A DNA stretch of 64,000 nucleotides. Source: Selaginella moellendorffii. Lineage: Eukaryota; Plantae; Lycopodiophyta. This document shows positions 1,829 through 32,990 of the stretch, one piece after another. The notes beneath the pieces were generated by a model. That model was not told the DNA's origin and searched no databases. It saw only the letters and a list, made by a program, of their open reading frames with translations. The stretch lies in contig NW_003314331.1 of assembly GCF_000143415.4 (NCBI RefSeq), positions 292,244-356,243 on the forward strand, in the 5' to 3' direction. The translations under genes and the position numbers were made by a program. The number at the start of each line of letters is the position of its first letter. Position 1 is the first letter of the stretch.

Positions 1829-2616
1829 AGCGCGAATGAGAGAACGCGAAAGAATAGAAAGAAATCGCGAGGAAGAGCTTCTCTTCTTTTTTTTTGGACG
1901 GGGATTTGGCGCGAGCGATTTTTTGTGTGTATCTACGAGGGAATATTGGGCGTGGTATATTCCATCGAGCTCCAAAACTCACCTTTTTACGAATATTTTA
2001 CAACCGAGTGTGAGTGATCTTGTGCTTTGTGCATTGCTTAGGCTAGGGTTCCTCGGGCTGCGCGGGCGGCGGCTCTCGATCGATCACCCGGAATTTCATC
2101 TTCGTATCCCCGCCGGGGCGACGCGATTCGATGAAGGGGAGGTAGCGGCGAGAATCGGGAGATTTTTTTATTCTCGCGCTTCTTCTTCTCGAGCAGTCGA
2201 TCAATCTGGGACGCGCGCGGGCTTGCATTTGGATGTGAATCGATCGCTGCGGTGAGTTTTCCCCCTTTTTCCATATAGTTACTGTTTGGATGTCGATTCG
2301 ATACATTTGAGCAGTGTGGGAGCGTCTGAGGGAGAAAACATGGCATGCCTCTCCGGAGCTCCTGGATTGCCTCTAGCCTGCGAGCGATTGGAGAAAGAGG
2401 AAGAAACTGGAATGGTAAGAGGATTTCCTTGAAGGAAGTTTCTCGAAAGCCGCTGATCTTTGTCTCGTTTCACGCAGCGTTAGCCCCAAAGCAGAAGCCG
2501 AAGAAGAACACGAAGAACAGAAGAAGAACAAGAGGAAGGAGAGGATGCTTGCCACGAGGTGAACTCTCCCAGGCCAAAGGACTTCCTTGGATCGAACAGG
2601 AGGGGAGAAGGAAGCC

Positions 2617-3354
2617 ATGGCTCCCCTCAAGGGTCCTCACAATGAGAGCTACACGGACTTCTACGACGATTGGTCCAACACGCAGCTCCAGCAGCTGGAA
2701 GAACTGGAGCGCGCTCTCAACAGCAACATGTCCGAGTCGGAGATCAAAGCTCTGGTGGACAAGGCCAAGATGCACTACGACTACTACTACGGCGCCAAGG
2801 ACAACGCCGCCAAGCAAAACGTCCTCCAAGTCATGACCCCGGCCTGGAAGACTCCACTCGAGACGGCCTTCATGTGGACAGGGGGGTGGCGGCCGACGAT
2901 GGTGTTCCAGCTCGCCTACGCGCTCGCCGGCCAGCTCGTAGAGGCCGAGCTCTCGGAGCTCCTCTCCGGGGTGGACAGCCCGAGCCTGGCTTCGCTCTCG
3001 GCCCGGCAGCTCGAGAGGATCAACGAGATGCAAGTGAAGGTCCAGAAGCAGGAGGACGACATCTCGCACCGGATGGCGGTGCTGCAGCAGGGGATGGCGG
3101 ACCAGCCGTTTGTGGGGATCACGCAGACGCTGGCCGCGAGCGAGGATGATAAGATGGAGGCGGCGCTGGATTCCAAGCTCAAGGATCTGGAGAGCCTGCT
3201 GGAGGAGGCGGATAACTTGAGGAGGGAGACGCTGCACAACATGCTGGACACGCTCACTCCCGTCCAGGCGGCTCAGTACCTGGTGGCGGCGGCGCAGCTC
3301 CAGGTGGCGTTCCGGAAGATTGGGGCAGTGAAGAACGGCAAGAGTGACGATTGA
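2617..3354 (+). CDS. DOG1-domain protein (DOG1-like/TGA C-terminal domain, no bZIP)
   Basis: Intronless ORF with FYDDW...HYDYYYGAK...PAWKTPLETAFMWTGGWRP...LSARQL...EADNLRRETL...LTPVQAAQYL; first ATG 2617. Confidence 0.9.
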   Translation: MAPLKGPHNESYTDFYDDWSNTQLQQLEELERALNSNMSESEIKALVDKAKMHYDYYYGAKDNAAKQNVLQVMTPAWKTPLETAFMWTGGWRPTMVFQLAYALAGQLVEAELSELLSGVDSPSLASLSARQLERINEMQVKVQKQEDDISHRMAVLQQGMADQPFVGITQTLAASEDDKMEAALDSKLKDLESLLEEADNLRRETLHNMLDTLTPVQAAQYLVAAAQLQVAFRKIGAVKNGKSDD

Positions 3355-3632
3355 GACGAGCAGCGGCGGAGGAATGTGGATCGATCGAGCCTTCGATGGG
3401 TCGATCCAAGCGAGAGTGGCGACGATACGATGGAGAAGAGAGGAAGAAAAGAACAAAGAAGTATCATGAGACCAGCGAGTGTTAGATTTCTTTTCCAATC
3501 GCATTTGTACCTGGAATATTCTTGGTATTTAAGACTTGCTTTTAGGGTTCTTTACAGTCGCATTTGAATTTCGAATATTCGTAGAATGTCCCTTTTCCCC
3601 AAATGCGAGACTTTCTTTTAGGGTTCTTATCG

Positions 3633-5085
3633 CTAGATCGATCGCGCGATAGCTGTCGCGGCAAGGAGGAGAATGGCGGCGATGAGGCGCGGCGCCAGCG
3701 GAGGATCGGCGCCGGAGGTCGCCGACGCCGAATCCCCCGCCTCGTTGATGCTGCGCAGCTCCAGCGTGTTGCTGTAGAGGCTGCCGAGGAGATCCTCGGC
3801 GGTCTTGTTGGAGGCGACGGACGAGGAGGCGCCCGCGGCGAACTCGTTGGCCAGGAGGTTCTCGCCGCTGAAGAGGTTCTTGAATGTCTCGTTGTTGTTG
3901 GCCTTGTCCATGACGTCGTTGAACTCCTGGATCTCTTTCTTGGAGAAGTTCCCGGCCACCATGATGGTGTGGCCGGGCGCGGTGCCGAAGTTGCAGGATC
4001 TGTAGCTGGAGATGCTGGCGCAGGGCTTTCCATCGAGTGGAGTCGGGCACACGAGCTGGTAAGATCCGGTGTCTTGGAGATTGGTCCAGTTTTGTTCTAA
4101 GTCGCCGCCCTTTGCATAGAGGCTCGGGATGGTGTGCTTCGTGAAGGCGATGTCTCCGCCGCCCTCCACCAAGCAACGGAACGCTCCAGAGTAGTCGTAG
4201 TAGTCGTCGTCCTCCGAGCATCCAGACTTGATCTTACAGCCGCTGCAAATGCTCTTCCTGGGATCGTTGCTCGCAGCACACGATGTGGAGAAGAAGGATC
4301 TCACGGACTCGATGTCGTTGGTGATCTGTGGATCCCTGCAAGAACACAAAAAAGTTTGCCAAGGTGGGTTTTTCCTTCTTTTTCTTTTACTTCTACTTCG
4401 ACTTACTTGCTGACCAAAGGCATGATTTTGTTGTGGATGAAGTATGTGACGGGGAGAACCCAGCCTGCCGATCTTCCGTAGCCGGTGTGGCAGGACTTTT
4501 TGCCGCGTAGATCTGATAGCTTCCTCGGGCAGCTGTCGGCTTTCACGATTCCAACGCCGTAGTATCTGCTGCTCTCGAGTTGATTCACCTCAGTCCGGAT
4601 GGGGAGGAGTCCATACTGCTGGGATGCCTGGAGGATCTCGCCACCGTCAAAGATGCCAATCTTTGCGCCGCCAGTCGCGATCTTCTTCATGCAGCTCTCG
4701 GCATCGCCTTCGCCAGCAACGCTACAAGCAGAAGACATGAGGTTTGGTTGCTTCTCCTCTTTTAATTGTGCGACTAAACAAAGATCTTACCAGCTGTGCT
4801 GGTGTTCTCTTTCAGGATCAATGCCGTCAAGGATGGTGTTCATCCTCTTGCACAAGTCAAGCTCGTCTTCGTCTTCCACGCACCACACCCAACCTGTTGC
4901 AGAGGAACAGGCGCTGCTAAGATCTCTAAGCCAAGGCTCTGAAACTTACTTTCCTGGAAAGGATCGTCGTCGTCATCATCGTCCCCGGATGGAGGAGCTG
5001 CTGCTGGCCCCTGTGAATCCACCTTGACCACAAAGAGCGCAACGCAGATCAAAAGCAGCAACAACCACAGGTACGACCGCTCCAT
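3633..5085 (-). CDS. Single-lobe transferrin-family protein with signal peptide and GPI-like tail (~418 aa; exons 5085-4950, 4893-4791, 4721-4407, 4335-3633)
   Basis: VWCVEDEDELDLC, IFDGG, YYGVGIVK, LRGKKSCHTGYGRSAGW, YYDYSGAFRCLVEGGGDIAFTKH, YQLVCP, CNFGTAPGHTIM; splicing keeps frame (1257 nt). Confidence 0.93.
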
Positions 5086-6386
5086 TCTTCCCTGTAAGAA
5101 TTTTACCAAGCTTCCATCAACAGGGAGAGAGGTCAATCAACACTCGCGCAACGAGAGAGCAAGGAAAACAAGAAAGAACTTGTGAGGCGCCGAAGAGCCA
5201 GGCAGGAAGATAAGGCCGTGCAATGTGCTCAGCCTCGCAGCAGTGGCACAAACACTTTTCTTTTCCTGATTGGCTGAGAGGGAGCTAAAGTAATAGATAT
5301 GCTCTCGCTCCTCGGTACTGCTAATCTTCTTGGTCATGAAACAGATACTTCTTTAACAGCATCGCAGAGAGAAAACGTACAGACAGCACATGATCAAAGA
5401 TTCAACCCAGAGGAACGCAAAGACCTGTAAGCTACATTTGCAGGAGAGGTATTACTGACCTGAGACCTCTTTGTTCTTCTAGAAAGGCTTGATCATCTAG
5501 TATCTGGGCTGTAAAGGCTCTATAGCTGCGAGCGAGAGCTTGTCGCTATGTAACATGATATGTGAGGTGACTCACTTTATATATTTCGCTCTCTCCTTGA
5601 CTAGCAGAGCGTTCCTCGTCACATGAAGTGCTCCTACGGGCAGAATATGCGCCGGCATCCACAGCGACGTGTGACCACGAAGCAAAAGTACGCTCGCAAT
5701 GTGGGCGACACGGGTGCGAGCAGGAAACTAGCTGAGTTGGCCGCCACATCAGCTGGCACGTAAGATATGTATCAATTTACACATAGGCATATTAGCGATT
5801 GAATACTTAGATAAAAAGAATTTGAAAATATCTGAATAAATTGAATTTGAAAATTTAATATAGTTTTAAAGCAAATCATTTTCGAATTTGCGTTTTCTAA
5901 AGCTCAAACAGTTCTACAAGAAAAAGGAGACAACGTTTCATCAAACTTTGTCGACAGATTTTCTGATTCACCAAATATATGTAAAGATGTACAAAGGAGC
6001 TTCCTAAAAAGGTCAGAGGCAAAGAAGAAAGAAAATCTAAAGAGGAAGAGCAATGGTGGATGTTACCTGCGGCAATGGAATGGAAAAACAGACCTCTACA
6101 AATTAAAAACCATGGAAGGCCGCTTGATCGCTTGCTTGCTCGCTAGAAACGTAAGCTTCGCATATCTTTGTTGGACGGTGGTACGCCGCCTTCTTTGTTT
6201 CATCATCATCTTGAGTGGAGAGGAGTAATGTTACAGGATCGGGGAACTTGGAGGAGAAGGTACGCTTTACAAGGAAGGATGGAATTGTGCTTCTTTTGTT
6301 GGATGGTTGTTTGTTTCATCGTTGTCTCTGTTGATCTTCTTCTTTCTTCTTCTTCGTCTTCTATACACGCGAAGCCCCGGCGAGAA

Positions 6387-9216: not shown

Positions 9217-12200
9217 ATATAAAAACCCCAGATCTAAAGGGTTTCCTCGAGCAATTTTAAAAATTTTAAAGGCGAGGATTTATCTGCAAGAAAATGTTTC
9301 GTAAAAACCAAGAAAAAAAAATTAAAAGGGAAGAGATCCGGTAAGAAGAAGAACAGGCAAATTTCTTTAAACTGACCCAAGCAACGAGATCAAGCATCAA
9401 GGAATCAAAAGGGATCTAAGAGATCTTACAATGCGCTTCTTGGAGGCCGATAATTCCCTACCGTACGCGGCCAATTCGCCCCCAATTCCTCGCACGCCCC
9501 GCAAGAAGGCCTCGGATTTCCCAATAGCCCCTACCGCCGCAGATCGATCCCCGGAACAAGGCCGCAAGATCTACCCTGGATGCCCCAATTCGCCGCCAAG
9601 ACGACGGATCTTTGCCTTCTTTCTTGACTTCTTCCAAGAATTTCTCACCCCTATCTCCTCGCCCGCCCGGCACCTAAGCCTCAATCCCTCGAGGAGCACG
9701 GCGCCGCCGTGGCGGCCAGCGCGCGTTCCTTCACAGGCACGCCCTCGAAGCGGCCGGCGCGAGCGCCACAAATTCCCCCTGCCGGAGGACGATCGCGCCC
9801 GCTAGAGCTCGCATTCGAGGCGCTTGGCGGCGGATCAAACGCCCAAAACGCTCCCTTCCTCTCTCTCCCTCTCTCGAAAAAATACCACACTCCAAATCTT
9901 TCTATGTCTTCCCAACGCGTGTTCTTCTTGTGTGTTCTGTAGGGCTTTGTTGTGTTTTTACCCCGCGGTTAAAAACTAATCTTTACCTCCAACTACAAAT
10001 ACCGGGTCGTCATTTACGGCATAAACCTCCGTCAAACCCAACGGCGATCCTCCGCCGTCCATTCCCAACCATCCGACGGTCCGGGCCCCGCGTGCTCTAA
10101 CGTGCGGCCAGCAATTGCAGCGCCATGCCCACTCGTATTCCACGTGTAGCTCTCTTTTAAACAGATAGGCTAGCGCAGCCCCGGCACAGGCCCAAGACAG
10201 GCCCGGCACAGCCTCGGCACAGCCTCGGCACACAGGCTCGGCCATCTTAAACCCCCTGGGTTTGAGATTTCGGGCTTTTTCCCTCCCTTATCTGCCACGT
10301 CCGCGCCTACGTGGCGAGCGGACCCAATGGCGCGTGTCCGTTTAACGTGGTCATCATCCACTTTTCCCATTGGCCAGCGTGTTTTACGTAGTGGGTTATA
10401 ATCCGTGCAGTCCAGAATGCCGTACGGGGCCATGCGCGCGCTCTATCCTCTGGCGCCCCCGGTCTGTGTGTGAGCCGGATGGATTGGCAGGGGAATCTTT
10501 TAGATTCCGGGCCGATTCCCCTAGTTGTTTTCTTTTCCCCTCAAGAAACATTCTAATCGCCAGTTTCTTGGAGGGGCGGCCATTCATGGCAAGCATGATT
10601 GGGTCATACCTTGGCAACCGAGCTTTGGATCTAAACAAACCCATCACCGTCCATTTAAGAAGAGAAGCGATTGTGTAGAGCTTACTTGATTGTGTGATTT
10701 TCCAGATTCCAATAACCCAGTTGTTGGATAGTAAAAAAAATGCGATTGATTATATTTTTTGGGTTTTGTATAGCTTATACAAAACTATACAACGAGTGCC
10801 TCGGCATTGAGGCTGGCATGTGGCCGCCCAACTACGCACCTCAACTTGAAAGGGTTGTTTTCTTGCAAATATTAGAGAAAGCTTGGAGGAACAACGCGGG
10901 ATGGATTGTTCCAAGATCTCAATCAAGTGTCTCGTCGGGATCAAAGAGAGAGATTTGGCATCGAAAACGTGACAGTCGCGTGGGGACAAAGAAGAAGAAG
11001 CGAGAATCAATCTCCTCCATATCTCAAGCCGCACAGAGTTCTCTTATTTTTCCTCTCAAAACCGCGATCAACTTGCTCGAAAACTCAAGGCGAAATCCTC
11101 GAAGTCAAACGTATTCAAAGGAGTTGACTATAGAAAGATTCCATCGCACCTCACATGTTGGTTGTATGGCGCCACAAGCAAGATGCCACGAACCGGGGAA
11201 TCGAATCATCGGTAATGACATAAACACAAAAAAAATCAACACACGACAGCCCACATTTGTGGCCAGGCCAGCCAGCGATAGACGATGTTCCTTTAACCTA
11301 AAAGGCTATTATACAGACTGGGAGAATCCAGATCCTCGAGAAAACAATGTGTGACTGTGAATCCCCTCGCTTTCCTCGCTCAGGGCTTCGATTCGAGCCG
11401 CGGACGTTTTGTTCCTGGTGTAACGTAGCTCTCGCCTCTAAATATTAAGAATAAAGGAATAAATAAAATAGAAGCACACATTCTAAATTGCTGACGCGTT
11501 GCTGGTGCTGTTCGTTTTTTGTACTATCCTGTTGTAGGAGGTGGTTTGGTAATTTGGTTCTTCCAGCATGATTCAAGGCAAGCACAGGCCAGACGCACCC
11601 AGTATAACTGCCAATTTTGTTCCAGAATTTATTTATAAATTCCAGAAAAAAGTATTGAATTTATATTTTTCGTGTAAATATTTCCGTTTCTTTTTTAATT
11701 CATAGAATGCTGTAAGAAACTGGCGATGGCGTGCGATGGACTCCTGTTGGTTACGTAATGGACAAGCGGCCAAGCAAACAGGTCAGTCAACTGGCCAGCG
11801 CGCAGCAGCGCTGCTACGTGACGATCGAAGATACCACTCACGCAATTGGAGCTTTGATCCAAAGTAATAACCATGTCTTCGCAACAAAATACTATACTAT
11901 AGAAACATCCACACCATTCAGAACACGAAATCGCTCGTGGAGGAAACAATACCAGTCCTGCTCGCATACGTCAGCAAAGCATTCTCTTTTCCTCCCTTAG
12001 GGCAGCTTTGTCAACTTTTATAATGGTCTCTGGAGCTTGATCACTCCTCTACCTACACTCTTTAGGAGAAAGCTTGTCCACTTGTGGATATATGTGTAGA
12101 CTATTTAATATGTATTCTAGATATTTAAAATTATTAAATGGTTGTTGCTTAGAATATGCTAGCATCACTCACTGGCGGCCTGCCACCATGAAAGGTCCAG

Positions 12201-25133: not shown

Positions 25134-26037
25134 GGGGGGTTTCGCACCCACCATTAAATTAGTAAATTTAATGGTAATTCGTTCACACCACCACACTATT
25201 ATATTAGATTTTGTAAACTCTAATTTAATAGATAATTTAATGGTAACTTGTTCACACCAGAAATAAACATTAAAGTAAGCTAATGTTACAATTAGCATTT
25301 CTTTCACATTTTTCGCTAAAATCCTAATGCTACACTTTTGTAGCATTAGGATTAAATTATTCCACGAATATTCTATAGGGCAATGTTAGATCCGTGCTGC
25401 TGCTGCTTCTTCATGCGCACAACTCTCCGAACGCCACCTCTTCCTCCTCCCTTGGTTGCTTCCATGACACACCCATTCCGCTGCCCCCACTGGAGAAGCC
25501 CACTGGGCTTGTTGGGGCTCTTGCACTTGTGCCCAACGCCACATTCCAGAGCACTTGCCTCCCCGTTGCTCTGCTCTGCCATGCCACTCGACGCCATTAC
25601 CGCCGCCAGGCTGGGGGACGAGGCCATTGCCGCTGCTGTGGAAGCTCCTCCTATCGTTGTCATTGCTGCCGCCTCCTCCACTGCCACTTTTTGAGGAGGG
25701 AGGGGGGAGATGGAGGAGCTAGTGCAAAGAGGGTGAGGGAGATTGATGGGGGTGGCTGGTGCCAAGATCTTCGTGATTGTTGCCGCCTTTTGCACTGCTG
25801 CATGTTATAAGGTATAACTTAATAGCTGGTGTGAACAGAGCATCATTAAATTAGCTAATTTAATGGGAGTGTGAACCAGTTAACATTATCCAAAGTTTTT
25901 ATCACCCAAAATGACTAATAACTACTAATGCTATTATTAACAAATATTGGTGTGAAAAGAATAACATTAAAATTTTAAATTAGGCTAAAATCCTCTGATG
26001 TAAAAGCCCTAAATTAATGGTGGGTGCGAAAACCCCC
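25134..26037. mobile_element. Non-autonomous PIF/Harbinger (Tourist-like) element with a GC-rich internal segment
   Basis: TIRs GGGGGGTTTCGCACCCACCATTAA ... TTAATGGTGGGTGCGAAAACCCCC; TTA target-site duplication (25131-25133, 26038-26040); subterminal TTCACAC / GTGTGAA repeats. Confidence 0.85.
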
Positions 26038-26879
26038 TTAGAATATAATTCCAGTTTACTAATGTCCTATATCATTGTTGTGCTATGTCATCCATGTTTT
26101 CCCAATCTTGGACCTCAATGTCTTTTTTCCATGCTCTAAGCGTTGTAAGGGAATCTTGCAACCTCACCACACAATCAAAATCCCATTGATTTCTCACTAA
26201 AACTGCCACTGAGAAATGTGTAATGAGTATATCCATATCCAGGAGTATGCCCAAAATTGTACCCCACTCCAGCATGGAAGGATTGCCTAGGCTCCAATGT
26301 AACAAGAACCCAAAGCTTGTAACTGAAAAAGAATGGCTAAATCTCACACATAGATAGATAGATTGATGAAAATTGAAATGATAAAGAGAAAATAGAAAAC
26401 GAAAGTAGAGATAAATAAGAATAAAGTGTGGAGTTTAAAAACACAAGAAGAGAAAAATTGGAATCTAAACTAAAAAAAAAAAAAAGGAAAAAGGAAGAGA
26501 TGATAAGACCTAAAGAAAAGAGTCTAAAATTTGGATTTTGGCCTCAAAAACATGTATAACATTGTGTTGTCAACAATATTGAATAAAAGGTGGTGGATCA
26601 TCTATGTTAGAAACTGTTTCTCACTAAGAAAGGTGGAATGGGATAGACTTGGATGTTTCTTTGCAAAAGCCTTAATCATCCATTAGCAGTCTCATCTTGT
26701 TGCTAAGTTGATATTATTGTATTGATCTAGTTGTAGTTTAGTAGTTTAATCCTTAGTACCATAGCAAGTTAATAACTAGTTTTTATAGATGGGTATGGGT
26801 AAGTTATAGTATTTCAAAATATCATTTTAAAATCTATGACTATAAAAAGGAAGAAATAATAAAGGGTATAATTATATGA

Positions 26880-28090
26880 TGAAGAAGTCTTAAATGTCAA
26901 TAGGACTTAGTGGATAGGCTTTTATGCGCTAACTCAATAGTGGTATTAACATGCACTACTATGATTAAAGAGGGGCTTGATGGGATTGGAAAAAGGATAT
27001 TAGAGGATTCTAGATCCTAGGGCTTCTTTAGAAATTGTCATAAAGAGATCATTTATGAAAGGATAGTTTTATCGTGGAAAGATAAATTTGTGATATGAGT
27101 GGTTTTGAATTATTAACAAGATTGTGAGAAGAGACGTGGCCTTAATGTAAGAGGTTGATATATTAGTGGTACTTTTGGATGTCGGAAGTGGGACTTAGAA
27201 ATATGAAGCACTTGGACTAACTTTAATAACAATATGGCTTTAGGCCATCTTTAAGTTAAAATGAGGACTTATAGAGGTTGTGAGTGAGGCTTCCAAAGGC
27301 ATAGTTAAGTGATTAAAGTAAAATAGAAAATTTAATCTTTTACATTCAGTATCAAATAAGTCTTATGATTTCTAAAATGAAGCATGTCGATGTTGCTATA
27401 ACTCTTTTAAGAGTCTTGCTCTCTTGAAACCTTACCCCTCAAGTAAATTAGACTACCAAATATCAATCTTAATATGTGATGTGATTTTCCTAAAGCAACT
27501 AATAATATCTTTGAGTTGAAGTAGTACTAGGTTAAGTGACTTTCCGTAAACTTTAAATTTAAGAGTTTACATTTGGTATATCAAGTCTAAAGACAACTTG
27601 TGTTTTTGACTATTGATATTGTTCAGCATTAGATTCTTGATTCTCTTTAGCATACTATACTAAAGAGTTGCCAACTGGACCCAATCCATATAAGCTCCTT
27701 TATTGCATCATGAATAAGGAGATTTTACTTCACAAATCCATTCATGCACTAGGACATTTAAACCTTAAATATCTCAAGACTTGTGTGCTTTTGTTCATAA
27801 GTTTTTTCCCTTTATATTTAGACCTTATTAGATTAATTTTCAAGTTATTCTCTTTAATTGCTTACACTCCATTGGTTTGAAGGGGCACAAAGTCTAACTT
27901 GGAGACACATTAGATATAAAGAATAACTTAGCTAAGATATATGAGTTAAGTGGGATAAGATAGGAGTTGAAGTTGGTATGTCTATCTGGGAAGCTATAGA
28001 CCATAAATATTTGACAGTATGGCAAGCAACATAAGTACAAGCACTTTGGGAGGCACACAATCATCATCACTTTGACAAACAATAAATGAT
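26880..28090 (+). mobile_element. Highly degenerate LINE (L1-like) ORF2 3' relic
   Basis: Broken frames give RLLCANS, GLRNMKHL...TIWL, LFNCLHS and WQAT.VQALWEAHNHHHF, resembling post-RT, zf-RVT and terminal W..RN...F motifs; many stops. Confidence 0.45.
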
Positions 28091-29509
28091 GGTTTCAACT
28101 TTGTGGCTACATAGTGAAGACTTACTCTAGTAGCTATATTCCTTCACTATGATATTTTGAAAGAATGGGAAAAACTTATTTGGCTAAAAGAATGGTAGAG
28201 CTGGTTGACTCCCATATTTTAGTAAGATGGTTGAAAATGAGGTACACTAGTAGTCAATCAATTGGAGGGGGGGAAGGGGATTTAGACATTGATGTGATTT
28301 ATAAAATATGTTCATATTTGCTTTTACTTCAAAACTATATGAGACACAAAGTAGAGTAACTTGATGAGAGGGTGGCATGCTTGATTTTTATGTTAATCCT
28401 CTTGGGACATTGGGAAATATATATATACATTTATTAAAGAGATCTTGAGTCTAGCTTTATTAGTTAGTTAGGGGAATCATATCATATGTTTAGGTTAATA
28501 TATAATTTACTTCTGCTAGGCTAAACCTGAGGGGTACAGTATAGAGATTAGGGCTCTTAGGAGAGTTATAACTCTTAGCTTTTATCACGAGGGTATGAAT
28601 TTATAGGGCAGTATGGTGGATTCAAGAAAATAATAAAAAAATTTATTAAAGTTCAATATAAATACAAAGGGCCCATGAATAAGAGTGCACCCTTTTTTCA
28701 ACCGATTAAAGGTTTTGGGTTAAATATACTTGAGTTTAAATAGTATTGAGCTAAGTTATAGTAAATTTAAGAGTTTACACCTCCATCAAAGCAAAACCAT
28801 TTACTATATAATGTGAAATTGGAATAATATCTTTTAAGTGGGAGATTTAAAATCTTATTATTGTGCTAGCTAAAGAGCATCATCAAGGGTTGCTAAAACA
28901 AATGCATGCACAAGCCCTATAAAATTTTGACAAAGTGCTAACCATAACATGCTTATTTAATTTGTTTTAACATATTTGACTCCACATAAAGTAAAAGGTT
29001 TTGGAAGTAAATTTTAAATTTGATAATATGGAAATAAGAAGGTATTTCCTATTATAAAGTAAGAGGTTATATGATATGGGAATCCATGCTTGAAGACGTC
29101 TAAAAGAAAGCTCTAATTTGCATAAATGGTAGCATTAAACATTATACCATTGTAATGCCATCCCTTGAAGACAAATAGGAAATTTGTGTAAACATTAGGT
29201 ATCATCTCATGAATGATAGATGTTAAGTATTATGAAGTGATTAAACCAATAGTACACATTATATTTAGGATTCCCATAGAAAAAATTTAGTCAAACATGA
29301 GGATTAATTAAAGAAACTAAACTATGTGTTGTGAATGTTGTTATCAATTACGTTTGATTGTTCAACTACATTTGTAATGCATTAAGCAACCACACCAACT
29401 ACTACTTTACAAAGGAGGTAGCTCTTGCAAAGGAAGTGGCAACTACTACAAAGGAGGTAATAGTTGCCCATCCATAGGTGCCAAAGAAAAGAAGAAAGAG
29501 AAGGCAATT

Positions 29510-29680
29510 CTAAATGGCCTATAGCCTCATGTTTTATAAAAAGAAGGATGGACTTAAGGAAATGGCTTCAGGGCCTCATGCTATCTAGGAATATAAAATT
29601 AATAAATGGCATGTGGCCTCATGTCATCTGAAACATTCTTAATAAATAACTAGTATGTAGCCTCATGCCATCTTAAATAT
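29510..29680 (+). repeat. Four imperfect ~45-50 bp repeats with core GCCTCATG
   Basis: atggcctatagcctcatg, atggcttcagggcctcatg, atggcatgtggcctcatg, tagtatgtagcctcatg. Confidence 0.5.
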
Positions 29681-30149
29681 TCCTAGGATTTCCACAACAA
29701 TGATGGTCTAGACAATAATAAAGCTAAATCTGGGAGAAAAAAAGCAAACAAAAGGCACAAATCTAGGCACTTCTTAGGGACACTTAAAGTTGCTACTCAC
29801 CTCCATGAATAGAATAAAAAAATACATATATATCTATATTAGCTTAAAACCTATATGAGCAAGTGGTCCAGATTAAATCCAATCTGGTGGCTATTAAAAT
29901 ACCACTATATTAATAATAGTATATGGCATTTACTTAGACCTCTTAATTATAAATTTTATAAAATTATTTGTATATATTTTTATTTTTATTTTATTTAAAT
30001 TATAAAATTAGTTAAGCATAAGTGATACTCAATTTATACATTTATGTTTATTTTTATTAAATAATAATCTATAAATTTACTTAAAATACATATAATTTTT
30101 TACTCTAAATAACTTTTAATATATATATATATTTAGGAGTTTAATTAAG

Positions 30150-30980
30150 ACATAAATGATGGTTTTGTCATAAAGATTTATGTGGAAACTTTGTTGTATA
30201 TAATACAAGGTTACAGTCATTTTGAAGACTTAAAAATGTACTTATAATACAAAAGGATTTTTTGTTACAAATAAAGTTTTTTGACCATTCAACTTTTTTA
30301 TGATTGCCATATAAAAATAAAAGTCCATCTATTTGTAGTTTAAGATAGCAATAATATATATATATGGTTTATTTGTTTTACTATCCCAAATCATATTTTC
30401 TCCTGAAAATAAAACAAGATTACAGTTTGAGTTTAAGAATAATATATGTTTTCCATTTGGTGAAATTAAAAATTCACTATAGAACAATATTGAACTATGC
30501 ATACCACCTTGAACAGTCATTTTAGATATATCACAATCTTCAAATGATAATAGTAAATTTGGATTTTTAGAATAAGATTTTGTGACTATAACTGATTTCA
30601 AGATTTCTCACTGTAACTCCGAAGTAATTTGCTGTTGCCCATAGCATAGAAGGTAAGTCTTAATTAGTCTTTCTATTCTTTGATAAATAGATTTTGAAGT
30701 TGCAAAATTTGGACTCCCACTAGAAATACAATTTGGTGGATTTCCATCAAATCTTGCAACTCTTACAATAACTGTTCCTACTGATATGGCATGTGTTATT
30801 TCATCTGACCAATCACTAGGATAATCACCTGTAAGAGGTCTAATGAGCTACCAAATGCTTGCAATTATCATCTCTATATCATTATCACTTACTTCATAAA
30901 AATCTCCATATTGAACACTCCTGCCATAAACTTTAAAAATTATTAACACAGTAGAGAAACTTAAGTCTTAAAACCATTTC
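30150..30980 (-). pseudogene. AT-rich relic of a secreted bulb-type (GNA-like) lectin gene with an extra N-terminal domain
   Basis: LISPNGKHILFLNSNCNLVLFSGENMIWDSKT, LKLQIDGLLFLY and LSLQNDCNLVLY (QxDxNxVxY); in-frame stops and frameshifts. Confidence 0.7.
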
Positions 30981-31244
30981 TACATATTTACATGTTTTCT
31001 TCCTGATTTTATATACAAATTGAAAGCAATATTTTTACAGGTGGAATACATATAGATGATAAAAAAATACTTAGAGTGCAAGAAATGTTACAATGACAAA
31101 CTATGCTGTATTAACAATCTTAGGACAAACTATGCTATGCTAACTATCTTTGGTCACTTTTGCCATATATTTATTGTCACTAATGGAGAAACTAAAACCC
31201 AAGCTTTCTTAAATACGAAGTATTAACAATCTTAACACTGAACC

Positions 31245-31735
31245 CACGCCTCATTTTCCTCGATCTCGACTTGGCCCTTCGTGAGTGGTTTCTCGGTCGA
31301 TTTTGATTTCTCTCCAGCGAATGCATGTCAAAGCGAGGCTCGATATTCTCACCGCGCAGGGCGTCGCCATGGCTGTGGCGTTGAGAACTCCCACACCCGA
31401 CATTGCGACTGCCTTTCTATCCAAGCTCAACCTCGCTACTCTCTTCTTCCCCTAGCGTTCCTTCCATCTTCCATAGCAATTTCTTCTTCTTTCCAGGAAA
31501 CCTACCCGAGCTGGAGCCACAAAACCGAGCACTTCCAAAAGATCCACCAAATGTCCAGCACGCCTTTCAAGGACATGCTGTTCTTCGATGACGAGCAACG
31601 CAACATAAGAGCAGTGAGCAAAAAACCTTCGTTCTCTAAAACTTTTCTTTGTTCAAGGTTTCACAAATGGGCGTCACAAGCATTCTTGTGGACGAGGGCG
31701 TCACCGGCAGGGGCTCAAGGATTAAAGAAATAGCT
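31245..31735 (+). pseudogene. Degenerate inverted duplicate of MDP1
   Basis: ETYPSWSHKTEHFQKIHQ...KDMLFFDDEQRNI; lacks start and has deletions relative to 24334-25014. Confidence 0.88.
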
Positions 31736-31784
31736 CATTGATTCGATTGAAAGAAGCAAACCAAGATTACAGGTAAGGAGAAAT

Positions 31785-32990
31785 CTAAATGCATAGGCAG
31801 TAGGAGCGCATCTTGAGTGTCACTCTTCTAAACAGTGGAATGCAAAACAACTCCACCACTTCATACTTCGTGTACACTACCACCCATTCGCTTGTGGGAA
31901 AGCCCATTCTTTCTTCCTCGTCTTCATCGCTCGACGACTCAGCCTCATGAAATGACTCAGCCTCTCTCATTTCATATCTATTCTTGCATTCTTTGCTGGA
32001 TTCCTTCTTTTCACACCCTCGCTTTTCACTTTCATCACCACCATTCTTGTATTCTTTGCTCGATTCCTTCTTTTCTTCCTGCTTTTCTTCGTAGGGTGTG
32101 TGAAGTTCCTCGACACCGACGCTAAGAAGTTCCTCTTTTATCTCATCTTCATCACCACCATTCTCTTTCGCATCGTATTCGTCGCTCAAATCCTTCGGTT
32201 CCTCGTCTCCCTCTTTTATATACTCGTCAGTGGTTTCGTCTTCATCGCTCGAATCGTCCTCTTCGTCTTCAATATCATCCTGTTCGTCACTATCGTTTTC
32301 ATTCTCATCATCATCTTGGTTAGAATCCTCCTCTTCCTCATAATCTTCCCCATGGGATGGGGACGGGGACGGGGATATAGATATAGAAGAATCACTGGAA
32401 TCCTCCTCCTGACTGCTCAAATATTCTTTCATATCATCCTGGAATCCTTCCCGCTGTTCCTCATCATCACCATCATCGCTCAAATTTTTCATATCATCCT
32501 GGAATCCTTCCTGCTGTTCCTCATCATCACCATCATCGCTCAAATTTTTCATTTCGTCCTGGAATCCTTCCTGCTGTTCCTCATCACTATCATCGCTCAA
32601 ATTTTCCATACCATCCTGGAATCCTTCCCGCTGTTCCTCATCATCACCGCTCAAACTCGCTTTCATATAATCCTGGAATCCTTCCTGTTCTCGGCCCTCG
32701 TTCCCTAATCCTTCCTTTCCTTTTTCGCAGTACGCTTCATCATCTTGCTCCTCGTTGCGAGTATGATCGATCTTTTCCTGCTCCTCCACTTCGCTATATG
32801 CGTACTCGGGCGCCGGTATATCTATACCATCGAAAAACTTCTTCAAGACTTCCTCTTTCCCGGGGACAACATCGTCAACTTTCGGGTAAACTTGGGTATC
32901 CTCGGGCCAAACACTGCAGAAGTCCTTTCCCACGTCCTCAAAGGACGAATCATCGCTAGCATCCACAACAACAAACCCGTCATCGGCCAT
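31785..32990 (-). CDS. Very acidic, probably disordered orphan protein (~400 aa) with tandem 20-aa repeats
   Basis: Intronless open frame from MADDGFVVVD; D/E-rich; no recognised domain. Confidence 0.6.
   Translation of the reverse strand: MADDGFVVVDASDDSSFEDVGKDFCSVWPEDTQVYPKVDDVVPGKEEVLKKFFDGIDIPAPEYAYSEVEEQEKIDHTRNEEQDDEAYCEKGKEGLGNEGREQEGFQDYMKASLSGDDEEQREGFQDGMENLSDDSDEEQQEGFQDEMKNLSDDGDDEEQQEGFQDDMKNLSDDGDDEEQREGFQDDMKEYLSSQEEDSSDSSISISPSPSPSHGEDYEEEEDSNQDDDENENDSDEQDDIEDEEDDSSDEDETTDEYIKEGDEEPKDLSDEYDAKENGGDEDEIKEELLSVGVEELHTPYEEKQEEKKESSKEYKNGGDESEKRGCEKKESSKECKNRYEMREAESFHEAESSSDEDEEERMGFPTSEWVVVYTKYEVVELFCIPLFRRVTLKMRSYCLCI
32415..32690. repeat. ~4.5 copies of a 60-bp coding tandem repeat (QQEGFQDDMKNLSDDGDDEE)
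   Basis: Lines starting 32461 and 32521 are nearly identical; flanking units are slightly shorter. Confidence 0.9.

What the first reader, a model, noticed from the sequence alone, without database searches (positions are those of the whole stretch)
3633..5085. Monolobal, probably GPI-anchored plant transferrin with a complete iron-binding ligand set
Motifs equivalent to the human N-lobe ligands are all visible: Asp (IFDGG), Tyr (YYGVG), Tyr (YYDYSGAF), His (APGHT), plus anion-binding Thr/Arg (CHTGYGRSAGW). It has a signal peptide, a poly-Asp stretch and a small-residue plus hydrophobic C-terminus (melanotransferrin-like anchor). Transferrin-like genes are known in algae and some plants, but they are not part of the textbook Strategy I/II iron uptake. 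Inference: a cell-surface Fe3+ capture protein.
Basis: partly seen in the sequence, partly recalled or inferred. Interest (0 to 1): 0.72.

Follow-up and report, generated by a model that had tools for sequence, protein, structure and literature searches.

The report
Single-lobe transferrin gene of a spikemoss
This is a real, expressed Selaginella gene for a one-lobe transferrin that keeps every iron- and carbonate-binding residue and ends in a lipid-anchor-type tail; databases already call it "serotransferrin", but its role in plants is untested.

Summary
Window 3633-5085 (minus strand) runs exactly from the stop to the start codon of a four-exon gene. It encodes a 418-aa protein identical to RefSeq XP_024515470.1, "serotransferrin [Selaginella moellendorffii]".

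- **Expression:** spliced contigs from four runs in four studies skip exactly the three predicted GT..AG introns.
- **Family:** Pfam Transferrin matches exons 3 and 4 (E 7e-18 and 7e-19). The best solved relative is human melanotransferrin.
- **Binding site:** Asp105, Tyr133, Tyr233 and His307, plus Thr159/Arg163, fall on the known iron and carbonate positions. The iron ligands and Arg163 are invariant in seven land-plant homologues; Thr159 is Ser in the mosses.
- **Structure:** an AlphaFold2 model (pLDDT 87) matches closed, iron-bound human N-lobes best (TM 0.77).
- **Ends:** the protein has a signal peptide. Its C-terminus has a small-residue site, a short spacer and a 14-residue hydrophobic end, a GPI-signal layout seen in all homologues with a complete C-terminus.
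- **Origin:** the plant sequences form one clade outside all sampled animal lobes, next to a green-algal transferrin. No flowering-plant member was found.

Iron binding, anchoring and the role in iron capture are all inferred. The gene is a new, uncharacterised member of a known family. It is moderately interesting and can be tested through its Marchantia orthologue.

The parts
4950..5085 (-). Exon 1. It holds the ATG (5083-5085), signal peptide residues 1-24, a likely cleavage before the invariant Gln25, and an acidic/Pro-rich linker.
   Evidence: Translation; 10-residue hydropathy maximum 3.58 at residue 8; Gln25 invariant in the plant alignment; exon borders confirmed by spliced contigs.
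4966..4986 (-). Run of seven Asp codons (Asp34-Asp40), just after the signal peptide. The run is not conserved in the homologues.
   Evidence: In the alignments this stretch is variable; in the ferns it is Pro/Ala/Ser-rich.
4894..4949 (-). Intron 1, 56 nt, GT..AG.
   Evidence: Skipped in contigs of 4 runs from 4 studies; splice sites.
4791..4893 (-). Exon 2. This is the start of the lobe (the WVWCVE strand) and holds Cys50 and Cys60 of the conserved disulfide framework.
   Evidence: Translation; Cys conservation; contig borders.
4722..4790 (-). Intron 2, 69 nt, GT..AG.
4407..4721 (-). Exon 3. It holds Asp105 (4646-4648), Tyr133 (4562-4564), Thr159 (4484-4486), Arg163 (4472-4474), and Ala165/Gly166 at the start of the anion-binding helix.
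   Evidence: Pfam PF00405 E 7e-18. The alignment to melanotransferrin puts Asp and Tyr on its positions 78 and 107. Column conservation. The model has a helix starting at residue 164.
4336..4406 (-). Intron 3, 71 nt, GT..AG.
3633..4335 (-). Exon 4 with the stop codon. It holds Tyr233 (4191-4193), Lys251, His307 (3969-3971), four N-glycosylation sequons, the end of the lobe and the C-terminal signal.
   Evidence: Pfam PF00405 E 7e-19. The alignment to melanotransferrin puts Tyr and His on its positions 210 and 279. Sequons and column conservation.
3636..3716 (-). Putative GPI-attachment signal. It comprises small residues Ser392-Gly393-Ala394 (candidate attachment site), a 7-residue spacer, hydrophobic Leu402-Ala415 (3645-3686), then Arg-Ser-Ile.
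   Evidence: Rule-based reading. All plant homologues with a complete C-terminus show the same layout, and it resembles vertebrate melanotransferrin tails. The model shows a low-confidence linker at 392-394 and a terminal helix at 398-417.
5086..5559 (-). Long 5' leader. Contigs reach 5398 to about 5559. It carries seven upstream ATGs, including a 66-codon upstream ORF at 5137-5337.
   Evidence: Contig extents; ATG scan.
3498..3632 (-). 3' untranslated region. Two of the four contigs end at 3498.
   Evidence: table 8.

Best explanation
The gene encodes a secreted, single-lobe member of the transferrin family.

**Shown here:**
- It is transcribed and spliced as modelled.
- It carries a signal peptide-like N-terminus.
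- It folds in prediction as one two-subdomain transferrin lobe.
- It keeps the full Fe3+ site (Asp105, Tyr133, Tyr233, His307) and the carbonate site (Thr159, Arg163, and the helix start at Ala165/Gly166).

**Inferred:**
- After signal-peptide removal before Gln25, the C-terminal 26 or so residues are exchanged for a GPI anchor near Ser392. The lobe then sits on the outer face of the plasma membrane, close to the wall, on a very short stalk.
- There it closes on one Fe3+ together with carbonate, as animal lobes do. It holds iron at the cell surface for later release by acidification, reduction or endocytosis. This is how the membrane transferrins of the green alga Dunaliella are thought to work.
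- The animal N-lobe 'dilysine' release switch is absent. The partner of Lys251 is Ala/Ser in all plant sequences, so the release trigger must differ.
For: - **Gene model and expression.** Exon-by-exon translations equal the database protein P0001. Contigs from 4 runs in 4 studies skip exactly the three introns.
- **Family.** PF00405 matches at 7e-18 and 7e-19. PDB matches to melanotransferrin and serum, ovo- and lactotransferrins reach 1e-33.
- **Ligands.** They align to melanotransferrin positions 78, 107, 210 and 279. The four iron ligands and Arg163 are invariant in 7 plant sequences, and Thr159 is Ser in the mosses.
- **Fold.** AlphaFold2 gives pLDDT 87.1 and pTM 0.78, with a helix starting at residue 164. 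Foldseek gives TM 0.77 to closed holo human N-lobes and 0.65 to open apo forms.
- **Ends.** The hydrophobic N-terminus and the GPI-type C-terminal layout recur in moss, liverwort, fern and Selaginella homologues and resemble melanotransferrin tails.
- **Constraint.** The second genomic copy differs at 4 of 1257 coding bases (1 amino acid), against 13 in about 500 bases of leader.
- **Surface-transferrin precedent.** Dunaliella transferrins are surface proteins induced by low iron (PMC10372677).
Against: - No metal binding, anchoring, localisation or iron-regulated expression was measured.
- No trained SignalP or GPI predictor was available.
- Contig depths cannot rank expression.
- The nearest algal relative found (Neomeris) shows no hydrophobic tail, so the anchor is not ancestral evidence for a surface role.
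- GPI-anchored melanotransferrin contributes little to iron uptake in mammals (established knowledge, from memory).
- The gene is missing from many plant lineages in my searches, so it is dispensable for plant iron nutrition in general.
Confidence: 0.6

Rival explanations
1. Same protein, same iron site and same surface or apoplastic location, but the role is iron withholding or buffering. It would starve microbes of iron or prevent iron-driven oxidative damage in the wall space, as lactoferrin, ovotransferrin and insect transferrin 1 do. It would not serve uptake.
For: The binding site and secretion signals fit withholding as well as uptake. Animal family members with this role are among the matches. 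Insect transferrin 1 in nutritional immunity is cited in PMC9343624.
Against: Withholding proteins are usually soluble and abundant. A membrane-tethered single lobe with a very short stalk suits capture at the membrane better. No expression data under infection were available.
Confidence: 0.22
2. The hydrophobic C-terminus is kept as a membrane-spanning anchor (a type I protein with a 0-11-residue cytosolic end), as predicted for Dunaliella transferrins, and is not replaced by GPI.
For: [quoted passage not shown] The model draws residues 398-417 as a helix.
Against: The uncharged run is only 11-17 residues in most homologues. In the mosses and the liverwort it runs to the very last residue, with no charged cytosolic stop. 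A small-residue triplet lies 7-10 residues upstream. That is the layout of GPI signals, including melanotransferrin's.
Confidence: 0.15
3. The lobe has been taken over for a ligand other than iron. Family precedents are saxiphilin, the inhibitor of carbonic anhydrase, and the non-iron-binding Dunaliella transferrin-like protein.
For: Such family members exist and appear among the PDB matches. [quoted passage not shown]
Against: Those proteins have lost ligand residues. Here the four ligands and the anion-site Arg are invariant, and the anion-site Thr changes only to Ser, from liverwort/moss to Ginkgo. The same columns vary in the animal lobes of the alignment.
Confidence: 0.06
4. The gene is an animal contaminant or a recent transfer from an animal, as was proposed for the two insect-like transferrins of Theobroma cacao.
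For: The best solved match and the next-best database matches after plants and one alga are vertebrate melanotransferrins. The cacao case is reported in PMC8401529, citing Bai et al. 2016.
Against: - The gene lies on a scaffold of about 1 Mb beside a plant DOG1-domain gene.
- A second, 98% identical copy has the same neighbours.
- It is transcribed in several Selaginella studies.
- Plant sequences form a 100/100 clade, with the mosses apart from the vascular plants.
- That clade is separated from all sampled animal N- and C-lobes by a 98/94 branch and groups with a green alga.
Confidence: 0.02

Closest known systems
Human melanotransferrin (MELTF/p97; PDB 6xr0)
   Same: It is the best solved sequence match (E 4e-29 and 1e-33). 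Its N-lobe has the same four ligands. Both have a C-terminal small-residue plus hydrophobic signal, and melanotransferrin is known to be GPI-anchored (from memory).
   Different: Melanotransferrin has two lobes and about 738 aa; the plant protein has one lobe and 418 aa. The plant clade lies outside all animal lobes in the tree. The tails are therefore probably independent inventions, and the HMMER alignment of the tails is low-complexity.
Human serum transferrin N-lobe (e.g. PDB 1a8e, 1d3k)
   Same: It is the best structural match (TM 0.77 normalised to the target). Equivalent residues are Asp63/Tyr95/Tyr188/His249, Thr120/Arg124 and Lys206. Twelve of the 14 mature Cys fall on Cys columns that are conserved in nearly all animal lobes (8 invariant, 4 with only gaps as exceptions).
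   Different: About 27% identity. Serum transferrin is soluble, has two lobes and depends on a receptor. The plant protein lacks the Lys296 partner of the dilysine switch (Ala351). It has a plant-specific Cys144/Cys290 pair. The RefSeq name 'serotransferrin' is therefore a family label, not orthology.
Dunaliella plasma-membrane transferrins (TTf and the TFN family)
   Same: They are green-lineage, cell-surface transferrins with a signal peptide and a membrane attachment. Their conserved five key residues go with strong induction by low iron (PMC10372677).
   Different: Dunaliella proteins have one to ten lobes and predicted transmembrane helices. They were too long for my length-limited searches, so I did not align them. 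The nearest alga I recovered was the ulvophyte Neomeris, with two or more lobes and no hydrophobic tail.
Diatom phytotransferrin ISIP2a / Chlamydomonas FEA1
   Same: The proposed job is the same: carbonate-dependent Fe3+ capture at the surface of a photosynthetic cell (established knowledge, from memory).
   Different: It is a different family. The Selaginella protein matches only PF00405, plus the related periplasmic-binding model PF12974.

Membership tests
Transferrin family (Pfam PF00405) | Sequence match above the curated Pfam threshold | tested here: met
   Exon 3 scores 65.3 bits and exon 4 scores 68.6 bits against a cut-off of 20.3. The database record carries PF00405.
Transferrin family (Pfam PF00405) | One lobe made of two alpha/beta subdomains around a hinge (periplasmic-binding-protein type II fold) | tested here: met
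   AlphaFold2 model with pLDDT 87.1. Foldseek gives probability 1.00 and TM 0.77 to human N-lobe structures.
Transferrin family (Pfam PF00405) | Iron ligands Asp, Tyr, Tyr, His at the canonical positions | tested here: met
   Asp105, Tyr133, Tyr233 and His307 align to melanotransferrin positions 78, 107, 210 and 279. They are invariant in 7 plant sequences.
Transferrin family (Pfam PF00405) | Synergistic-anion site: Thr, Arg and the N-terminus of the following helix | tested here: met
   Thr159 (Ser in mosses), Arg163, Ala165 and Gly166. The model helix starts at residue 164.
Transferrin family (Pfam PF00405) | Conserved disulfide framework | tested here: met
   Twelve mature Cys fall on Cys columns conserved in nearly all animal lobes (8 invariant, 4 with only gaps as exceptions). 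Two more (Cys144, Cys290) are plant-specific and invariant. Pairing was not checked in coordinates.
Transferrin family (Pfam PF00405) | Reversible, carbonate-dependent binding of Fe3+ | not testable with these tools
   This needs recombinant protein and spectroscopy.
Serotransferrin (the name given by RefSeq) | Two homologous lobes, a soluble plasma protein, and orthology to vertebrate TF | tested here: not met
   The protein has a single lobe of 418 aa. It has a hydrophobic C-terminus. It falls outside all vertebrate lobes in the tree.
Melanotransferrin | Placement within the melanotransferrin clade, and two lobes | tested here: not met
   The plant clade is separated from melanotransferrin N- and C-lobes by a 98/94 branch. 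The protein has one lobe.
GPI-anchored proteins | N-terminal signal peptide plus a C-terminal signal: small residues at and after the attachment site, a polar spacer, and a hydrophobic end with no cytosolic domain | tested here: inconclusive
   The layout is present and conserved: Ser392-Gly-Ala, a 7-residue spacer, 14 hydrophobic residues, then 3 more. It was judged only by simple rules; no trained predictor or experiment was used.
Phytotransferrin (ISIP2a/FEA1 type) | Membership of that sequence family | tested here: not met
   The Pfam scan at E up to 1 reported PF00405, PF12974 and a chance-level DUF7111 match (0.11; 13.4 bits against a 27-bit cut-off).

The most novel reading that the evidence does not exclude
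GPI-tethered single-lobe transferrins are an ancestral land-plant system for capturing Fe3+ with carbonate at the cell surface. The system was inherited from green algae and kept in liverworts, some mosses, lycophytes, ferns and Ginkgo, and was lost in flowering plants. It would be a third iron-acquisition route beside the reduction and phytosiderophore strategies, and a land-plant counterpart of Dunaliella transferrins and diatom phytotransferrin.
Probability: 0.3. Interest if true: 0.75.

Novelty: new member of a known kind. Interest (0 to 1): 0.5.

Why it matters
Accounts of plant iron nutrition are built on flowering plants, which, as far as my searches show, lack this gene. A transferrin with an intact iron site appears to have been inherited vertically from green algae. 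It is kept under constraint in liverwort, moss, lycophyte, fern and Ginkgo. This suggests early land plants handled extracellular Fe3+ partly the way algae and animals do.

The idea is directly testable because Marchantia polymorpha, which is easy to edit, has an orthologue (MARPO_0071s0117). If the protein captures iron at the surface, it would also be a compact, single-lobe, membrane-tethered Fe3+ binder of interest for engineering iron uptake. If it does not, it is simply one more uncharacterised family member that automatic annotation has already named.

Tried and rejected
1. **Literature.** Nine full-text searches found no paper on a land-plant transferrin. Many hits were the word 'transferring' or pharmacology reviews. 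The one relevant title, Bai et al. 2016 (Comp Biochem Physiol D 17:1), is not held. I cannot say whether it lists this gene. Citing papers mention only insect-like cacao genes and the absence of transferrin receptors in flowering plants.
2. **Genomic context.** Pfam scans of neighbouring ORFs gave only a DOG1-domain gene. Nothing iron-related lies next to the gene.
3. **Contamination or transfer from animals.** Rejected; see the rival explanations.
4. **Earlier notes of this scan.** Nothing on transferrin.
5. **Ligand distances.** Model coordinates are not exposed to scripts (one search lists /data).
6. **Joined spliced model.** Searches were made exon by exon by reference. In some searches an open read-through upstream of exon 4 served only to widen the length window, and scoring was restricted to exon 4. 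Full-length work used the database's own protein P0001, which those searches returned.
7. **Exhaustive representative search.** Left unused because of its stated cost. The absence from flowering plants therefore rests on three word-seeded searches only.

Full report
**What is in the sequence**

On the minus strand, an ATG at 5085 opens a gene that ends at the stop codon 3633-3635. It is not a single open frame.

Reading the DNA gives four exons: 5085-4950, 4893-4791, 4721-4407 and 4335-3633. They are separated by GT..AG introns of 56, 69 and 71 nt. The exon lengths sum to 1254 coding bases, or 418 codons.

- Exon 1: the hydrophobic N-terminus and seven consecutive Asp.
- Exon 3: FDGG, YYGVG and CHTGYGRSAGW.
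- Exon 4: YYDYSGAF, APGHT and the small-residue plus hydrophobic C-terminus.

**How the spliced model was handled**

Family and structure-database searches were made exon by exon, by reference.

For the word-seeded protein search, the 233-residue exon 4 would have excluded a full-length protein of 418 aa by the tool's length rule. I therefore gave a longer stop-free read of the same strand (window 3636-4445) and restricted words and scoring to exon 4 with the region option.

That search returned a database protein, P0001, of 418 aa. It is identical to the four exon translations plus the three split codons. All later full-length work used that database record.

**Identity and expression**

- P0001 is RefSeq XP_024515470.1, "serotransferrin [Selaginella moellendorffii]", on a scaffold of about 1 Mb.
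- A second record, XP_024545775.1, differs by one residue. It lies on another scaffold with the same neighbours: a DOG1-domain gene downstream and a ubiquitin/TPR gene upstream.
- The two loci are 98.1% identical over 2.45 kb. They differ at only 4 positions in the coding sequence, against 13 in about 500 bases of 5' leader. This fits two haplotypes (inference) with the coding sequence under constraint.
- Twenty public runs hold the stretch. In the four I laid, from four studies, assembled contigs skip exactly 4335-4405, 4722-4790 and 4892-4947. With the stated offsets these are the predicted introns, and the ends read CT..AC on the plus strand. Contigs that lack introns must come from RNA, so the gene is transcribed and spliced as modelled.
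- One contig carries the other copy's variants at 5132 and 5155, so both copies appear to be expressed.
- Contig depth cannot measure expression level.

**Family and binding site**

- Pfam Transferrin (PF00405) matches exon 3 (E 7e-18) and exon 4 (E 7e-19). A weaker match to the related periplasmic phosphonate-binding model is also present.
- Against solved structures the best match is human melanotransferrin (6xr0), followed by ovo-, sero- and lactotransferrins.
- Counting along the printed alignments, the Asp of FDGG falls on melanotransferrin residue 78. The first Tyr of YYGVG falls on 107, the Tyr of DYSGAF on 210 and the His of PGHT on 279. By my recollection of the UniProt record, these are the four metal ligands of its N-lobe. 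They correspond to Asp63, Tyr95, Tyr188 and His249 of human serum transferrin.
- In the Selaginella protein the ligands are Asp105, Tyr133, Tyr233 and His307.
- The carbonate-binding Thr and Arg (human Thr120, Arg124) are Thr159 and Arg163. Ala165-Gly166 follow at the start of a helix, which begins at residue 164 in the model.
- In an alignment of seven land-plant sequences with 34 algal and animal lobes, the plant residues at these positions are invariant, apart from Thr to Ser in the mosses. The same columns vary among the animal lobes.
- Twelve of the fourteen mature cysteines fall on Cys columns that are conserved in nearly all of the other lobes. Two more, Cys144 and Cys290, are invariant in plants and absent from animals, which suggests an extra plant-specific disulfide.
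- Lys251 matches human Lys206. The position of its partner Lys296 is Ala or Ser in every plant sequence, so the N-lobe dilysine release switch is not present.

**Structure**

An AlphaFold2 model built on that alignment has mean pLDDT 87.1 and pTM 0.78. Low confidence is confined to the stretch between the signal peptide and the lobe, and to the linker before the C-terminal helix.

Foldseek finds transferrin lobes only. It gives TM 0.76-0.77 (normalised to the target) for closed, iron-bound human N-lobes and about 0.65 for open apo forms.

**The two ends**

- *N-terminus.* It has a short polar start and a strongly hydrophobic core (10-residue hydropathy 3.58). Val-Asp-Ser precedes a Gln that is invariant across the plant alignment, and the mosses have Val-Trp-Ala before the same Gln. 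This is the shape of a cleaved signal peptide.
- *C-terminus.* It reads Ser392-Gly-Ala, then a seven-residue spacer with two Pro, then 14 uncharged hydrophobic residues, then Arg-Ser-Ile.
- *Homologues.* Every plant homologue with a complete C-terminus has a small-residue-rich stretch followed by 11-17 hydrophobic residues, with 0-11 residues after them. In the mosses and the liverwort the hydrophobic run reaches the last residue.
- *Reading.* That is the layout of a GPI-attachment signal rather than a membrane span with a cytosolic stop. It resembles the tails of vertebrate melanotransferrins recovered in the same searches.
- *Caveat.* This is a rule-based judgement. No trained predictor was on hand.
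- *Poly-Asp run.* It sits in a variable linker and is not conserved.

**Relatives and origin**

Three word-seeded searches, one of them with a profile of the plant sequences, recovered plant-clade members from these species only:
- Selaginella.
- Ginkgo biloba.
- Two Adiantum ferns.
- The moss Ceratodon purpureus, with two loci (chromosomes 3 and 11).
- Marchantia polymorpha (MARPO_0071s0117).
- A few unnamed transcript fragments.

The next hit is a two- or three-lobed protein of the ulvophyte green alga Neomeris dumetosa. After that come vertebrate melanotransferrins at about 30% identity. No flowering-plant protein appeared.

These searches score only the 8000 candidates that share the most words. 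The absence is therefore probable but not proven, and I left the exhaustive search unused because of its cost.

A maximum-likelihood tree of plant sequences and separated algal and animal lobes gave these results:
- The plants form a 100/100 clade.
- Mosses split from the vascular plants (100/99 and 90/91).
- The clade is joined to the two Neomeris lobes and separated from every animal N- and C-lobe by a 98/94 branch.

This fits vertical descent within the green lineage followed by repeated loss. It argues against contamination or recent transfer from an animal. The tree is unrooted, and only one alga was sampled.

**How it most likely works**

Shown:
- A transcribed, correctly spliced gene.
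- Secretory-type ends.
- A confidently predicted single transferrin lobe.
- A complete, conserved iron and carbonate site.

Inferred:
- The signal peptide is cleaved before Gln25.
- A GPI anchor is attached near Ser392.
- The lobe is displayed on the outer face of the plasma membrane on a very short stalk.
- It closes on one Fe3+ with carbonate.
- It hands the iron on by acidification, reduction or endocytosis.

The precedent is the iron-deficiency-induced surface transferrins of Dunaliella. In that alga, domains that keep the five key residues belong to the highly induced proteins (PMC10372677).

The main rival is the same chemistry used for withholding or buffering iron in the wall space. 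A retained membrane span, a non-iron ligand and contamination are less likely, for the reasons given under the rival explanations.

**Comparison with what is known, and novelty**

By every sequence and fold criterion I could test, the protein is a member of the transferrin family. It is not a serotransferrin or melanotransferrin orthologue, because it has one lobe and sits outside their clades. It is unrelated to the ISIP2a/FEA1 'phytotransferrins'.

The homology is already recorded by automatic annotation. A 2016 phylogenomic survey of animal and plant transferrins, which I could not read, may list the gene.

I found no functional study of any land-plant transferrin in the open literature available here. 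I therefore rate it a new, uncharacterised member of a known kind. Its architecture, a single lobe with a GPI-type signal, and its pattern of retention make it moderately interesting.

Noticed in passing
window 5086-5559 (minus strand): The transferrin mRNA has a long 5' leader of at least 313 nt, up to about 474 nt. It carries seven upstream ATGs, including a 66-codon upstream ORF (5337-5137) that ends 52 nt before the main ATG. This may mean translational control. The upstream ORF has no Pfam match.
   Followed up: partly
window 2587-3354 (plus strand): A DOG1-domain gene (Pfam PF14144, E 9e-30) converges on the transferrin gene. Contigs of two runs continue from the transferrin 3' end across 3400 into it, so the 3' ends of the two genes may overlap.
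   Followed up: partly
L001 4001-5453 (GL377629.1) against window 3633-5085: A second, syntenic copy is 98.1% identical and differs by one amino acid (Lys to Arg at residue 92). It is presumably the other haplotype of the assembly. One RNA contig carries its variants at 5132 and 5155, so both copies seem to be expressed.
   Followed up: yes
P0001 residues 144, 290, 239 and 245 (window exons 3 and 4): Cys144 and Cys290 are invariant in plants and absent from animal lobes, which suggests an extra disulfide. In the mosses the otherwise universal Cys239 is Gly, and a new Cys appears at position 245, which suggests a shifted disulfide partner for Cys157.
   Followed up: partly
P0176 (Marchantia PTQ35516.1) and P0002 (Ginkgo Gb_31201): Two public gene models look faulty. 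The Marchantia model lacks the stretch that carries the first ligand Tyr and the Thr/Arg anion site, and it has a long, non-secretory N-terminal extension. The Ginkgo model stops before the C-terminal signal. The original 2011 Selaginella annotation had only a 161-aa fragment (EFJ13093.1).
   Followed up: no
window 3498-3632 (minus strand): The 3' UTR holds two copies of a roughly 20-nt motif that contains AACCCTAAAAG, which resembles a telomere-repeat-like box. The other copy of the gene has an 11-nt deletion (3538-3548) inside the second copy of the motif.
   Followed up: no
window 12001-14000 and 26001-32000: These are AT-rich stretches (GC 0.26-0.34) in a window that otherwise has about 50% GC. 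They may be repeats or transposon remnants.
   Followed up: no
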